Positions 57,890 to 63,153 of a DNA stretch of 64,000 nt are shown here, piece after piece. The notes under the pieces are model-generated. The model searched no databases, was not told where the DNA came from, and saw only the letters and a program-made list of their open reading frames with translations. The stretch is from Lepidodermella squamata (Eukaryota; Animalia; Gastrotricha). Where the stretch lies: positions 62,001 through 126,000 of the forward strand of contig JBLDXI010000020.1 in assembly GCA_047495785.1 (NCBI GenBank), written 5' to 3'. The first letter of the stretch is position 1; each line of letters opens with the position of its first letter. Position numbers and translations under genes: made by a program.

Positions 57890-58411
57890 TTAACGCCTAC
57901 GTCCGATTCGGAGGAAACCTGAGGCCCGATTCTGGCGAGCGAAAAGTTTCGCAATTGCATCGGAATCCTGACCTGCCCGCCCGATACGCATGAAACCAGC
58001 TGCGCGCTTTTCGACGCTCTCCTCGTCCTCACTGCTGTCGATGTTTCGCTTGCCGATGCGAAGAAAGCCTGATGCGCGCTTGCCGATCCTCATGAACCCA
58101 GCTGCTCTTTTGCCGATGCGCATAAATCCGGAGGCCCGCTTGCCAATTCGCATGAATCCAGCGGCGCGCTTGGCCCAGCCATCGATGCTACCGAACCCGT
58201 TCTCTTCGCTGCTGTCTGGCGTCACCACCTCGTCACAGAGAGTCACGGCGTAGCAACGATCACCCAGCCGTAGTGCCTCGGCACCCTCCGCCGAAAGGCA
58301 GGGGACATTTTTGAAGCCGACCTGGCAATCGTCGATGCCATCAGCAAGGCAAAACGTCGACAAAACCGTCAACGCAGCGAAAACCGAAGGAAGCCAAGCA
58401 GCATTTACCAT
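57890..58411 (-). CDS. FxRIamide (AxGFxRIamide) neuropeptide precursor, single coding exon
   Basis: Signal peptide MVNAAWLPSVFAALTVLSTFCLA; 4-Cys pro-region; six basic-site-flanked, Gly-extended peptides: AAGFMRI-G x3, ASGFMRI-G x1, ASGFLRI-G x2. The first ATG is at 58411; 58420 in the ORF track is a TTG. Confidence 0.95.
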   Translation of the reverse strand: MVNAAWLPSVFAALTVLSTFCLADGIDDCQVGFKNVPCLSAEGAEALRLGDRCYAVTLCDEVVTPDSSEENGFGSIDGWAKRAAGFMRIGKRASGFMRIGKRAAGFMRIGKRASGFLRIGKRNIDSSEDEESVEKRAAGFMRIGRAGQDSDAIAKLFARQNRASGFLRIGRRR

Positions 58412-59390
58412 TTTTGTCAAACAATTATTTCAAAAAGGGGAATGACCTAGATGAATGAGTAAATGGAAAATGGAATTCGTGGCTTATAACCATCGTGCCG
58501 TGTGACCGGCAGCGTCGAACTACGGCGTGGAGGCGGATATCTAAGGTTATCGTTATCGAATTAGATGGAAGCTTGAAAGCGCCTTGAGCGCTCTGAAATT
58601 ACTCGATCAGACTTGTATGCGCGAAATTGCGCCATATCATCGACTAGTCATCTCGGTCAATTGAGTTAAACGTCACGACAAATAGCGTGATGACAAAGCC
58701 CGACAGGAAAAAATACAGAAAAAATGAAATTATGTTCACCACCGTTTTTGGGAAACGATATATTCGTTTTGAGTACATCATCACGAAAAACGGCGCGGCC
58801 ATATGATGGCGCAGTGCGGTAACGCGGTGCTGCGCACGGAAATGGCAGGCGTAATGCAAGCTAACAAATGAACTCCCACGCCCTCGAAATAGCGCGAGGC
58901 TCACTGCTTCACCCGAAACAATGAAGGCTAATAGGCACACCTATGTAATTGATAATTGTTCATTGCAAAGAATGAAGAGTGAAAATAAAATTTGAATTCT
59001 AAAAAAAATTTTAAATACGAAAAAACAGGAACTATGCGTAGCAAAATAGCTTCCGAGTTGACTTGTCGATGTGACGGGCGCAATTTTAATTGTTGATGAC
59101 TTTAGTTTGCCTGCAGCGACACTGCGCGGCCTTAATCCCCACACACGCGTATCTTTGCGCTGTGCAGTCCCGATTTAGCAAGGTGTAAATGACGGGGACA
59201 AAAGGTACTGACAAATAGAGGCACGATTTATGAAGATTCGGCACAGCTTCCCACGGAAGTCGATTGGCTTTCTCACTTCAAATTATTGGTGTCACTGAAC
59301 AAACACGCCCCGAGGAATATCAAGAGAGTAGTGATGGCCAATATGCTGATGTTTATTTTTCATTCATTTTTAACGCTTCAAAATATGCCT

Positions 59391-61463
59391 TCATTTTTTG
59401 CCGAGGGCGGCGAGGAACCCAGCCGTCTCCTGCGCTTGCTGCTGCTCACTGTCGTAGCCGGTGCGTTCTCGCGCGTAAGGGTCGTCGTCATAATTGTAGG
59501 ACGACCGGTAGTAACCCACGTTCGTGTCGTCCTCGTCCTCCTCGTTTGACGGCGTGTCGCTTTCAGCATAATCACTCTGCGGCGCGTCGCTTAGTGCCAC
59601 TTGTGGGTCGGCACTTGCTTGCGGCACTTGTTGATTGTTCTTCATTAGCATATCACTTTCTTTCGCCACCTTGCTATTATGCATCATCATCGAAGAGTGA
59701 TCCATCGTCGATGATCCGTCGGAATTACCGTGGTCATGCGCCATAGGCATTACGCCAGGCGGGGGCGGCGGCACTTCGCTAACCTAAAATAATTCATAAA
59801 ATAAATTTTTGATTAACACTTCGCATTCAAAATTAGTAGTACGAATGATACCGTTTTGGGCATAGCCGACAGATTTAAGTTTCCGTCGTGAAAATCGCGC
59901 CACGTGAATGCAGGCGGGCCTGGATTCTGGCAGAACGCCTGATCGGGACGAGGCCCATCAGTGTAGTAGTAAATGTAAAAATTGCACATTTCTGCGTGCT
60001 GGCTGCTTCTGAAAGATTAAATTTTGGGAAGTTAGCACCAAGATGAAGATGAAAATCGTTCCTAAAAATAATATGTGCCCTGCATTTTCATCAACTTTCC
60101 AACTAAGGGATTCATTATTTTCGTAACAAAGGCTCCCAACGGAAACTTTCAGCTGAATTACCGCTCTAAAGCTTCATAGATCATATGGTAACGATTATGG
60201 AAAGCTCTTGGAAAGCTGGGAATCCGGAGCAATTCGGCTAGCCCAAGTTGAAGCTAGTAAATTTAAGATCAATGCCGAAATGCCGAGTTATCTCCTTGTA
60301 CTAACCCCGAATTATTAGCAAATCGGGACACTTCTACTCTTGTTTCAGCGGTCGATGTATAAAAAGTAGCTTACCCGATAGAAACCGAATGATCTCCGTT
60401 GTTGAACATGGTACAGCGAGCCGCGAGAATGTCGTTTTGGCGGATGTCAACGCCTGGCGATGTCACGTCATAAAATGTCTGGGGAAGGTTTGGGCTTTGA
60501 CGGCCGATCTCAGTCCACTGGCCGTCGCGAACACGATAGCCGCTAAAAATATGCCAAGTTGCGCTTCAGTAAACGTAGACAGAGCGGAAATTCTAATACC
60601 TTATTACGAGGCCGTTCGAGTGCGAATGTGTTCGATATGCGAATGGATGCAGTTCCAAGCCAACTGGTTGGTCCAGAAGGCAGGCAACTTCGAAATTTAC
60701 TACTTGTTTCGGAGGTATAACGCCATCAGTAGAGGCTAGTAGAAAAATGCCGGCGAGACGAGGTGTCCTGAACACAAAATATTTTTCACAAGAAAATTCG
60801 ACTGATAATGATGATTACGGCTTAGATGACGTGAGGAATTCAACACCCGCCTGGTCGGAGATGGTGCTCGGTGGATGGAAGACGGTCGTGTCTTTGTAGT
60901 GTTGCTGTAGCACCAGATAGCGTGTATCATCGGTCCCGACGAGGTATCCGACGTCCTCGGGCAGACTGAATGCAGGCGCTCCCATCGCCCAAGCGTAAAT
61001 GATAGTCGGCGCCTGCCCATCAGCGCATATCGGGCCTTTTTCGTAAGCTACCTGATTGCTGTCGCTGGGATCGGTCATTTCGCCACAATTCCATGCGTGG
61101 CTGGGCTGCGGCATATTGGACTCAGCACAGCCGTAGACTATTATGTGGTGATTGATTGACTTGTTTGCAATTGGATTGAACCCAACTAAAATTTGAATTG
61201 CTTCATTAATTCACATAATTCAGCCGTAACTGAATTCATACCAATGTAAACAGGAGAATCAATGCGTCGGGTGTAACATAACGTTAAATCATCCTGCAGA
61301 AACGTAACTTGAGTGGATATTTTTTGCATTTTCGGTTTCTACTCACTGTTTGGGGTCGAACTGATGGCATCCGCAGTTGAAAGGATCCGTCACTACCTGA
61401 ACCAAGGACGCCAATAGCGCCAAAAATCACCGGCAGCAACATGGAAGAACTTATTAGAAACAT
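59391..61463 (-). CDS. PHM: Monofunctional peptidylglycine alpha-hydroxylating monooxygenase (exons 61463-61347, 61293-61242, 61185-60819, 60767-60600, 60542-60375, 60008-59852, 59783-59391)
   Basis: Signal peptide, LRMPSVRP, CuH ligands NHHIIVYGC and LQQHY, YAWA, CuM ligands FAYRTHSH and EMCNFY. No PAL or transmembrane domain; AATAAA follows the stop. Confidence 0.95.
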
Positions 61464-62551: not shown

Positions 62552-63069
62552 TCACTTAGCCGGGCCGCCAGCCGTCAACACTTTGCTTTGCTGCTGCATG
62601 TGAAGGTGAGCTAATTGCTGCTGGTAGAAAGCGGCGTGACGCAGCAGGTCAGCAAGGTTCGCGAAGTGAGACGTGCTCTTACGTAGATCTGCGATCGTCC
62701 TCACGCCATATTGCAAGTCTTCACAAGCTTCTTCTAGCCGCGAGTTCGCCCCATCAACCGCTGACTTCCTTTCGATAAGATGAGGTACGCTTTTTCGCAC
62801 ATGCTCCTGTAAGCAAAAATCTTAATATCCTGATTAGAAAATATAATATCCAGTAATATACTTGAATTCGGAAGAAAGCTAAGGAAGGTTCATTAGCAAC
62901 TCCGTGAAGATTATCCGATAGACGATCCGTTACTTTTGCCGCTTTATTTTCGACGGTGGGATCTCGCAAAAAGGCTGAAACAACAGCAGCCGCGGCGCCT
63001 ACCGTTGGTGGGATTTGTATGTTGCTATCGATGGTGTTTTTTCTCTGCATATGCGCCTGATTCGCCATT
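62552..63069 (-). CDS. BORCS8: BLOC-1-related complex subunit 8 (MEF2BNB)
   Basis: KVTDRLSDNLHGVANEPSLAFFRIQ|EHVRKSVPHL; intron 62861-62807. Start is 63069 or 63095; the C-terminal end is uncertain. Confidence 0.9.
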
Positions 63070-63153
63070 TCAAAGTCAGTAATAAAATCTATCATAGATA
63101 ATTACCAATCAAATTTCGATCAATTTAATGGTAAGCAGCAAAAATAAATCGCC

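What the first reader, a model, noticed from the sequence alone, without database searches (positions are those of the whole stretch)
57890..61463. Neuropeptide precursor clustered with its own maturation enzyme (FxRIamide + PHM)
Seen: a precursor with six Gly-extended, basic-site-flanked peptides begins ~980 bp downstream of the PHM stop on the same strand, with no gene recognised between them. Established: PHM performs the first step of converting peptidyl-Gly to peptide-amide, which these peptides need. Animal prohormone genes are not generally known to cluster with processing enzymes. Inference: a substrate-plus-enzyme unit resembling a RiPP gene cluster, co-regulated or co-transcribed. 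A splice-acceptor-like catctag ~37 nt upstream of the precursor ATG would allow release from a polycistronic RNA.
Basis: partly seen in the sequence, partly recalled or inferred. Interest (0 to 1): 0.75.

Follow-up and report, generated by a model that had tools for sequence, protein, structure and literature searches.

The report
Neuropeptide gene beside amidating enzyme gene
In a tiny freshwater animal (probably the gastrotrich Lepidodermella squamata), an ordinary neuropeptide gene lies about 1 kb behind the gene for the enzyme that starts peptide amidation; a second, distant species keeps the same pairing, but nothing shows the two genes are copied or controlled together.

Summary
A single-exon, 173-aa precursor (58411-57890, minus strand) carries six Gly-extended A[AS]GF[ML]RI peptides. 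It starts 979 bp after the stop of a seven-exon, catalytically intact, soluble PHM gene on the same strand. The spacer holds no gene, RNA family or repeat.

For it: a deeply diverged second species, known only from metagenome contigs (synonymous sites saturated), keeps PHM followed by an FxRIamide precursor. Orientation and the roughly 0.9 kb spacing are the same, although most flanking genes are reshuffled.

Against it:
- The PHM is not a dedicated copy. It belongs to the old monofunctional protostome PHM lineage and is part of a known "dual" system (PHM, a separate PAL 1.6 Mb away, and a bifunctional PAM 2.5 Mb away).
- The PHM orthologue of Capitella has no such neighbour.
- About 16% of the other adjacencies I sampled are also conserved, so retention alone is weak evidence.
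- Each PHM has a poly(A) signal just after its stop. The spacer is far longer than the operon gaps (26-34 nt and about 100 bases) that earlier scan notes report for this genome. A TATA-plus-initiator pair precedes the precursor. Acceptor-like sites also precede the PHM start codon.

No RNA data could be reached. The scan earlier noted a peptide-plus-copper-monooxygenase neighbourhood elsewhere in this genome (s1-422800), with a DBH-like enzyme rather than an amidating one.

The parts
57890..58411 (-). FxRIamide-type neuropeptide precursor CDS: single exon, 173 aa plus stop, with a signal peptide and a 4-Cys N-terminal region.
   Evidence: ORF and sequence. Orthologue in the second species with the same architecture, 56% identity. 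Profile hits to mollusc FxRIamide precursors.
58046..58171 (-). Block of four tandem peptides with cleavage sites: KR-AAGFMRIG-KR-ASGFMRIG-KR-AAGFMRIG-KR-ASGFLRIG-KR.
   Evidence: Read. This is the best-conserved part against the second species (tblastx 77-91%).
57977..58009 (-). Fifth peptide: KR-AAGFMRIG-R (monobasic site downstream).
57893..57928 (-). Sixth peptide: R-ASGFLRIG-RRR at the C-terminus.
58412..59390 (-). 979-nt spacer between the PHM stop and the precursor ATG. It is unique, does not align between the two species, and holds no gene or known RNA.
58448..58454 (-). Acceptor-like 'catctag' after a pyrimidine-rich run, 37 nt before the ATG. All three frames behind it contain stops before the ATG.
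   Evidence: Read. A comparable site (tctcccatag) lies 5 nt before the ATG in the second species.
58453..58488 (-). TATAAG (58488-58483) and the initiator-like TCATTC (58458-53), whose A at 58456 lies 32 nt downstream of the first T of TATAAG. This is a candidate own core promoter for the precursor.
   Evidence: Read. Motif-level only. Not conserved in the second species.
59352..59357 (-). AATAAA poly(A) signal, about 35 nt after the PHM stop.
   Evidence: Read. The second species has two AATAAA within about 50 nt after its PHM stop.
59391..59783 (-). PHM exon 7: EVPPPPPG, a His/Met-rich stretch, an acidic/Tyr-rich tail, and a C-terminal ...GFLAALGKK followed by the stop.
   Evidence: The same layout appears in the second species.
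59852..60008 (-). PHM exon 6, with the EMCNFY motif (CuM methionine).
   Evidence: PF03712 positions 128-155.
60375..60542 (-). PHM exon 5.
   Evidence: Part of the PF03712 match (C20:122374-122754). tblastx to the second species.
60600..60767 (-). PHM exon 4, with HPFAYRTHSH (CuM His-x-His and the substrate-binding Arg).
   Evidence: aligned to rat PHM FAYRVHTH.
60819..61185 (-). PHM exon 3, with HHIIVYGC (CuH His-His), WNCGEM, and LQQHYKD (third CuH His).
61242..61293 (-). PHM exon 2 (DDLTLCYTRRIDSPVYI).
   Evidence: Read. tblastx to the second species.
61347..61463 (-). PHM exon 1, with signal peptide. An acceptor-like 'ctattgcgtag' ends 17 nt before the ATG.
62552..63095 (-). BORCS8 gene, the next gene upstream on the same strand, 1.09 kb before the PHM ATG.
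   Evidence: Pfam PF10167. Conserved in the second species, where extra genes (K2P channels and a 103-aa ORF) separate it from PHM.

Best explanation
These are two ordinary genes with separate transcription units that have been head-to-tail neighbours since before two deeply diverged species split.

The downstream gene encodes a secreted prepropeptide. By inference from the established pathway, prohormone convertases cut it at KR/R/RRR sites and a carboxypeptidase trims the basic residues. PHM then hydroxylates the exposed C-terminal Gly, and PAL releases the amide. The predicted products are AAGFMRI-NH2 (x3), ASGFMRI-NH2 (x1) and ASGFLRI-NH2 (x2).

The upstream gene encodes the animal's general soluble monofunctional PHM. 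It has all copper ligands and belongs to the old protostome PHM lineage. It works within a dual amidation system, alongside a separate PAL and a membrane-bound bifunctional PAM elsewhere on the same contig, and presumably serves all amidated peptides.

The adjacency is an inherited small syntenic block. It is kept passively, because a 0.9 kb gap that contains the precursor's promoter is a small and costly target for breakpoints, or at most through a shared regulatory neighbourhood. It is not an operon and not a dedicated enzyme-substrate cassette.
For: - Gene models and motifs.
- Only two PHM-type loci in the genome, the window gene and a PHM-PAL-TM PAM at C20:2.59 Mb. A separate PAL lies at C20:1.748 Mb.
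- PHM-A shares the W-x-CGEM insert with monofunctional PHMs of Capitella, Patella, Crassostrea, Meloidogyne and Ixodes. It sits outside the PAL-containing clade in a quick tree.
- Dual systems are described in the literature (PMC6669573).
- Poly(A) signals follow the PHM stop directly in both species. The spacer does not align, and TATA plus an initiator-like pair precede the precursor.
- Acceptor-like sites precede the ATG of both genes in both species, so they say nothing specific about polycistrony.
- Other small blocks are also conserved between these genomes: MT-like with BORCS8, and BTB-CFAP58-LRR.
- No multi-amide precursor lies within 10 kb of PAL or PAM. No precursor lies near the Capitella PHM.
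Against: - The pair is retained with the same orientation and nearly the same spacing, while about 10 other genes within 10 kb in the second species have no counterpart in the 84 kb around the pair. The orthologues I located lie on other contigs or 1.3 Mb away.
- Only about 3 of 19 other sampled adjacencies are conserved, so passive retention is not the default outcome.
- The functional match of the two genes is striking. By my rough estimate, not a tool result, the prior chance that one of three amidation genes has an amidated-peptide precursor as an immediate neighbour is about 2%.
- Promoter motifs are weak evidence and are not conserved in the second species.
- No RNA evidence exists either way.
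Confidence: 0.6

Rival explanations
1. The pair is a selectively maintained, co-regulated enzyme-substrate neighbourhood. The two genes keep separate mRNAs but share enhancers or a chromatin domain active in peptidergic cells, so breaking the pair is disadvantageous.
For: - Adjacency, orientation and the roughly 0.9 kb spacing are conserved in a species with saturated synonymous divergence.
- This holds despite an insertion of K2P genes just upstream, a synteny break just downstream, and relocation of the neighbours' orthologues.
- The background conservation of other adjacencies is only about 16%.
- PHM acts directly on these peptides (established biochemistry).
Against: - Only two species, so this is one independent comparison.
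- The spacer shows no conserved block at all.
- PHM-A is the general PHM, needed by every amidated peptide.
- PAL and PAM have no precursor neighbours.
- Capitella shows no linkage.
- A related precursor (P0174), from the same metagenome sample as one of the second species' contigs, lies away from any PHM.
Confidence: 0.25
2. The pair is a polycistronic (hybrid-operon) unit. PHM and the precursor are transcribed as one pre-mRNA, and the precursor mRNA is released by spliced-leader trans-splicing at the acceptor 37 nt before its ATG.
For: - Same strand, with acceptor-like sites before the precursor ATG in both species.
- Earlier scan notes, not tested here, report spliced-leader trans-splicing and tight operons in this genome.
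Against: - The distance from poly(A) signal to acceptor is about 900 nt in both species, against the 26-34 nt and about 100 bases that those notes give for operon junctions.
- The first gene (PHM) has an equally good acceptor-like site before its own ATG, so such sites do not mark downstream operon genes.
- TATAAG and an initiator-like motif sit 32 nt apart just upstream. If that start site is used, only 8 nt would precede the acceptor, too few for it to be spliced.
- The precursor protein is on record in no transcript-derived collection.
Confidence: 0.08
3. The adjacency is pure chance in one compact genome, with no evolutionary depth.
For: Gene density is high, many neuropeptide genes exist in this genome, and the scan reads thousands of windows, so some functional-looking neighbours are expected.
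Against: The same pair, in the same order and orientation, occurs in four metagenome contigs of a second, deeply diverged species.
Confidence: 0.03

Closest known systems
FxRIamide (S-Iamide) neuropeptide precursors of molluscs, annelids, nemerteans, brachiopods and phoronids (PMC4200219, PMC8557429)
   Same: Both are secreted precursors with several short peptides ending F-x-R-I-Gly plus a basic site. There are profile hits to Gigantopelta (2e-22) and Octopus (4e-19) precursors whose peptides end FLRIG/FVRIG.
   Different: The peptides start A-[AS]-G-F instead of the common x-S-S-F. There are only six copies. The precursor has a 4-Cys N-terminal region. It comes from a phylum with no described neuropeptidome that I could find. 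A paralogue in the same genome ends in FMRF-Gly, so a lineage-specific origin from an FMRFamide-like gene is not excluded.
Monofunctional soluble PHM of protostomes (Drosophila Phm, scorpion PHMm; dual alpha-amidation system, PMC6669573)
   Same: It has a signal peptide plus the PHM catalytic core only, with all CuH and CuM ligands. It coexists with a separate PAL and a bifunctional membrane PAM encoded by independent genes.
   Different: It has a 130-aa C-terminal tail with PPPPP, a His/Met-rich stretch and a conserved ...LAA[LF]GKK end. This tail is seen in both gastrotrich-like species but not in the named orthologues I read.
Spliced-leader operons (nematodes, tunicates; reported for this genome by earlier scan notes)
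   Same: Same-strand neighbours, a poly(A) signal after the upstream gene, and an acceptor-like site before the downstream ATG.
   Different: The gap is about 900 nt rather than tens to about 100 nt. A candidate promoter lies in the gap. No leader-bearing RNA has been seen.
Bacterial and fungal RiPP biosynthetic gene clusters
   Same: A ribosomal precursor peptide is encoded next to an enzyme that modifies it, and the pairing is kept in a second species.
   Different: The enzyme is a general housekeeping amidating enzyme, not cluster-specific. The second required enzyme (PAL) and the proteases are unlinked. There is no evidence of co-transcription, and the pairing is absent in Capitella.

Membership tests
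FxRIamide neuropeptide precursor | Signal peptide and multiple peptide copies ending F-x-R-I-Gly, flanked by basic cleavage sites | tested here: met
   Six copies of GF[ML]RIG with KR/R/RRR flanks and a hydrophobic N-terminus.
FxRIamide neuropeptide precursor | Sequence similarity to accepted family members | tested here: met
   The two-species profile hits Gigantopelta (2e-22) and Octopus (4e-19) precursors made of xxFLRIG/FVRIG repeats. The similarity rests mainly on the repeats. The single-sequence word search had missed them. Pfam gives only a weak FARP match.
FxRIamide neuropeptide precursor | The x-S-S-F-x-R-I heptapeptide core typical of many members | tested here: inconclusive
   The core here is A-[AS]-G-F-[ML]-R-I. 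Crassostrea members also mostly lack SS (PMC4200219), so the feature is not strictly defining.
FxRIamide neuropeptide precursor | Mature amidated peptides and a cognate receptor | not testable with these tools
   Needs mass spectrometry and receptor deorphanisation.
Peptidylglycine alpha-hydroxylating monooxygenase (monofunctional PHM) | Cu2_monooxygen N- and C-terminal domains | tested here: met
   PF01082 and PF03712 match on exon pieces.
Peptidylglycine alpha-hydroxylating monooxygenase (monofunctional PHM) | CuH ligands (HH...H), CuM ligands (HxH...M) and substrate-binding R/N/Y | tested here: met
   HHIIVYGC and QQHYKD, FAYRTHSH aligned to rat FAYRVHTH, and EMCNFY in exon 6. Residue identities were read from the alignments.
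Peptidylglycine alpha-hydroxylating monooxygenase (monofunctional PHM) | Closer to PHM/PAM than to DBH-like enzymes, with no DOMON or temptin domain | tested here: met
   PDB search: PAM 2e-10 against DBH 3e-5. The signal peptide is followed directly by the catalytic core. The best named relatives are annotated PHMs.
Peptidylglycine alpha-hydroxylating monooxygenase (monofunctional PHM) | No PAL domain or membrane anchor in the same gene | tested here: met
   Exon 7 ends in a stop followed by AATAAA. The tail is hydrophilic. PAL matches lie only at C20:1.748 Mb and 2.59 Mb.
Peptidylglycine alpha-hydroxylating monooxygenase (monofunctional PHM) | Enzymatic activity on peptidyl-Gly | not testable with these tools
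   Needs expression and an assay.
Spliced-leader operon | Same-strand genes with a short intercistronic gap (tens to about 100-200 nt) | tested here: not met
   The genes are on the same strand, but the gap is 979 nt from stop to ATG and about 900 nt from poly(A) signal to acceptor, in both species.
Spliced-leader operon | Leader sequence on the downstream mRNA and read-through pre-mRNA | not testable with these tools
   No transcript of either gene could be reached.
RiPP-like enzyme-substrate cluster | Tailoring enzyme dedicated to the neighbouring precursor | tested here: not met
   PHM-A is the single monofunctional PHM of the genome and belongs to the pan-protostome lineage.
RiPP-like enzyme-substrate cluster | Co-localisation conserved across taxa | tested here: inconclusive
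   Conserved in one deeply diverged relative. Absent within 10 kb of the Capitella PHM. Patella, Gigantopelta and short metagenome contigs were uninformative.

The most novel reading that the evidence does not exclude
The PHM-FxRIamide pair is a selectively maintained animal enzyme-substrate gene neighbourhood. An amidating enzyme and one of its peptide substrates are held together, across deep divergence, by shared regulation. This would be a eukaryotic analogue of a RiPP cluster. It may go together with the enzyme's unusual conserved tail (a His/Met-rich copper-binding-like stretch and a C-terminal Gly-Lys-Lys that itself looks like an amidation signal).
Probability: 0.2. Interest if true: 0.65.

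Novelty: new member of a known kind. Interest (0 to 1): 0.4.

Why it matters
Both genes are ordinary members of known families. They extend the FxRIamide family and the dual amidation system to a phylum whose neuropeptides are essentially undescribed.

The one unusual point is that a processing enzyme and one of its substrates have stayed neighbours in two deeply diverged species. If further gastrotrich genomes and expression data showed that this is selected, it would be a rare animal case of enzyme-substrate gene linkage. It would also be a handle on how peptidergic cell identity is regulated. As it stands, the linkage could be a small leftover syntenic block.

Tried and rejected
- **Exact look-up and single-sequence word search with the precursor.** They found nothing. 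The word-search blank was a false negative, because the two-species profile later found the second species' precursor and the mollusc precursors.
- **JGI metagenome scan with the precursor alignment.** No relatives; the patterns were drawn from the poorly conserved N-terminus.
- **JGI scan with the PHM exon-3 alignment.** It gave 27 loci of 33-62% identity. Most are short or transcript-like, and none holds an FxRIamide-type ORF. This says little about linkage.
- **Contexts of other PHM relatives.** Patella has no neighbouring gene within 10 kb. For an unknown AT-rich micro-invertebrate, the contig ends about 1.4 kb after the last called PHM exon. One contig had no DNA available. One contig ends at the PHM. 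The Gigantopelta FxRIamide gene spans 115 kb. All were uninformative.
- **'Dedicated recent PHM duplicate' reading.** Rejected. The tree is a quick tree on 146 columns, because the careful search did not finish. Most deep forks are open, so it supports only the coarse statement.
- **PHM-precursor fusion by cis-splicing to the acceptor at 58448.** Rejected, because all three frames hit stops before the ATG (read).
- **Hidden gene, ncRNA or repeat in the spacer.** None found.
- **P0174 as a third-species orthologue that lacks PHM linkage.** Its N-terminal Cys motif (CEVVQRLC) resembles that of the genome's second precursor (CRIIQTLC at C20:2.107 Mb), so I read it as the other paralogue type. This is tentative.
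- **PDB search with exon 6 alone.** No hit; the piece is too short.
- **Joined spliced model.** The spliced PHM model was searched exon by exon by reference only. The joined model was not searched or folded.
Full report
**What is there**

On the minus strand, a single-exon ORF runs from ATG 58411 to stop 57892-57890 (173 aa). It has a hydrophobic signal peptide and an N-terminal region with four Cys that are conserved in the second species. It carries six Gly-extended peptides:
- KR-AAGFMRIG-KR-ASGFMRIG-KR-AAGFMRIG-KR-ASGFLRIG-KR
- an acidic spacer
- KR-AAGFMRIG-R
- a spacer ending RQNR
- ASGFLRIG-RRR

Upstream on the same strand is a seven-exon gene. Its exons are 61463-61347, 61293-61242, 61185-60819, 60767-60600, 60542-60375, 60008-59852 and 59783-59391. 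All introns are GT..AG, and the product is 473 aa by my reading. I searched the exons separately by reference. The joined spliced model was not searched or folded.

The exon pieces match Pfam PF01082 and PF03712. They match rat PHM/PAM structures better than dopamine beta-hydroxylase. The copper ligands and substrate-binding residues are present: HH in HHIIVYGC, H in QQHYKD, H-x-H in FAYRTHSH, and M in EMCNFY. There is no DOMON, temptin, PAL or membrane segment.

The stop (59393-59391) lies 979 nt before the precursor ATG, and 'catctag' lies 37 nt before that ATG. The spacer is single-copy in the genome. It has no Rfam match, no Pfam match for its longest ORF, and nothing conserved at protein level in the second species.

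**The organism**

The assembly (121.2 Mb, 151 contigs) fits the published Lepidodermella squamata assembly (122 Mb, 157 contigs; PMC11660948). Earlier scan notes reach the same guess. I did not test the identity further.

**Is the PHM a dedicated copy?**

The genome has about 41 matches to the copper type II monooxygenase domains. Earlier notes describe most of them as temptin-domain DBH-like genes. One on C12 is a DOMON-bearing, single-exon, 598-aa DBH/TBH-like gene.

A search of the genome with PHM exon 3 finds only two PHM-type loci:
- the window gene;
- a gene at C20:2.59 Mb, which continues into a His-rich linker, a PAL domain, a membrane span and a cytosolic tail. This is a classical bifunctional PAM.

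A separate PAL gene with its own signal peptide lies at C20:1.748 Mb. This is the 'dual alpha-amidation system' already described for scorpions, other arachnids and crustaceans (PMC6669573).

An exhaustive HMMER search with exon 3 returns monofunctional PHMs as its best full-length hits. Named ones come from Capitella teleta, Patella vulgata, Tegillarca, Crassostrea, Meloidogyne, Ixodes and Stegodyphus. The window PHM shares with them a W-x-CGEM...GP-x-C insert. The PAM of the same genome and all PAL-containing hits lack it.

In a quick tree (146 columns, SH-aLRT only, careful search unfinished), the window PHM pairs with its second-species orthologue (99). Both lie outside the clade (86) that contains the genome's PAM and all PAL-containing proteins.

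So the enzyme is the general, ancient monofunctional PHM. It is not a recent copy dedicated to this precursor.

**The precursor's family**

FxRIamide (S-Iamide) peptides are a known lophotrochozoan family (PMC4200219, PMC8557429). A profile of the two orthologous precursors hits mollusc precursors made of xxF[LVI]RIG repeats: Gigantopelta at 2e-22 and Octopus at 4e-19. Membership is supported by motif and profile similarity.

The usual Ser-Ser before Phe is replaced by [AS]-Gly. A paralogue at C20:2.107 Mb encodes AANFMRFG, ASNFMRFG and FMRLG. A lineage-specific relationship to FMRFamide-like genes therefore remains possible. I found no paper describing gastrotrich neuropeptide precursors.

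**Is the linkage conserved?**

Exon 3 has one close relative in the word-indexed database (65% identity). It is carried by four ENA metagenome contigs. In all four, the PHM orthologue is followed on the same strand by an orthologous precursor. The gap from PHM stop to precursor ATG is about 0.9 kb. The precursor has the same architecture and six peptides: ASGFIRIG, ARGFLRIG, ASGFLRIG x3 and NSGFLRVG.

The species is distant:
- protein identity is 56-64% for the PHM exons and the precursor;
- synonymous sites are saturated (pS 0.66-0.84);
- dN is 0.27-0.43;
- the spacer does not align;
- intron positions differ.

The neighbourhood is otherwise reshuffled. Upstream, a methyltransferase-like gene and BORCS8 are shared. 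In the second species, two K2P-channel genes and a 103-aa ORF on the opposite strand sit between BORCS8 and PHM. Downstream of the precursor, nothing is shared with the 58 kb of window available. The orthologues of three of those extra neighbours lie on contigs C50/C42, on C26, and 1.3 Mb away on C20.

As a control, I examined another contig from one of the same samples (L068). It shares a collinear BTB-CFAP58-LRR block with C33 and then breaks.

From these contigs, roughly 3 of about 19 other adjacencies are conserved. The count is rough, because gene calls on metagenome contigs are fragmentary. Retention of the pair is therefore not the default outcome, but it is not rare either. With one independent comparison, it raises the case for constraint only several-fold.

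**Other taxa**

- Capitella's PHM orthologue has a RIG-I-like helicase upstream, and an unrelated 185-aa gene and a C-type lectin downstream. No FxRIG-type ORF occurs in six frames within 10 kb.
- Patella, Gigantopelta, an AT-rich micro-invertebrate and 27 JGI contigs were uninformative.
- Within the genome, no multi-amide precursor lies within 10 kb of PAL or PAM.
- A related three-peptide precursor (P0174, SGFMR[IV]G), from the same sample as one contig of the second species, lies between LRR and peroxidasin genes, away from any PHM. Its Cys motif resembles the genome's FMRF-type paralogue, so I take it for the other paralogue type. This is tentative.

**One transcription unit or two?**

Several points argue against co-transcription.
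- Both PHM genes have AATAAA within about 35-50 nt after the stop. This leaves about 900 nt to the acceptor-like site. Earlier notes give 26-34 nt and about 100 bases for operon junctions in this genome (not tested here).
- In the window, TATAAG (58488) and the initiator-like TCATTC (A at 58456) are 32 nt apart, a canonical core-promoter spacing. A start there would leave only 8 nt before the 'catctag' acceptor, so the two readings exclude each other.
- Acceptor-like sites also precede the PHM ATG in both species (17 nt and 10 nt) and the second species' precursor ATG (5 nt). This fits general leader trans-splicing or 5'-UTR introns for each gene, and is not specific to a downstream operon gene.
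- Cis-splicing from PHM into this acceptor cannot give a fusion protein, because all three frames have stops before the ATG.

These are motif-level arguments. No transcript of either gene was reachable.

**Verdict**

The genes are real, intact and ordinary members of known families. The neighbourhood is ancient enough to be shared by two deeply diverged species, which is the interesting part.

My estimates are:
- about 0.6 that this is a passively inherited two-gene block with separate promoters;
- about 0.25 that selection for shared regulation keeps it together;
- about 0.08 that it is transcribed polycistronically.

A similar idea was raised earlier in the scan on other DNA (s1-422800). There the enzyme was DBH-like, not amidating, and no functional link was shown.

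Noticed in passing
window 59391-59783 (-); L023 1470-1851 (+): The PHM tail is conserved in layout in both species: EVPPPPPG, a His/Met-rich run (e.g. MDHSSMMMH; MMMNHHGMNHH), an acidic Tyr-rich part, and a C-terminal ...LAA[LF]GKK before the stop. The His/Met run looks like a copper-binding motif. The Gly-Lys-Lys end looks like an amidation signal on the amidating enzyme itself. The named PHM orthologues I read end differently. The PAM linker in this genome is also His/Met-rich.
   Followed up: partly
G000 C20: 121391-123463 (PHM), 1748530-1748904 (PAL), about 2591900-2594760 (PAM): All three amidation genes of the genome (monofunctional PHM, monofunctional PAL and bifunctional membrane PAM) lie on one 3.26 Mb contig.
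   Followed up: partly
L040 1199-1695 (G000 C20:2107179-2107675); L068 10001-10489: A two-exon paralogous precursor encodes AANFMRFG, ASNFMRFG and FMRLG. A metagenome precursor with a similar N-terminal Cys motif (CEVVQRLC against CRIIQTLC) encodes SGFMRIG and SGFMRVG. If these are orthologues, the C-terminal residue switches between Phe and Ile/Val in this lineage, which blurs the line between FMRFamide and FxRIamide.
   Followed up: partly
window 62552-65427 (-); L022 2531-5124 (+): A methyltransferase-like gene and BORCS8 sit 58 nt apart (stop to called start) on one strand in both species, a possible operon pair. In the second species, K2P-channel genes on the opposite strand are inserted between BORCS8 and PHM.
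   Followed up: partly
L001 838-2634 (G000 C12, -): A single-exon 598-aa DOMON-bearing copper monooxygenase (DBH/tyramine beta-hydroxylase-like) is the strongest Pfam match in the genome. It is intronless, unlike the PHM.
   Followed up: no
window 60819-61463 against L023 249-1205: Intron turnover in the PHM gene. The second species lacks the window gene's introns 1 and 4, and has an extra intron inside the region that is exon 3 here.
   Followed up: no
G000 C50:341830-343407 and C42:2085229-2086129: The K2P channel of the second species has two near-equal best matches (73-75% identity) on different contigs. They may be a recent duplication or uncollapsed haplotypes.
   Followed up: no
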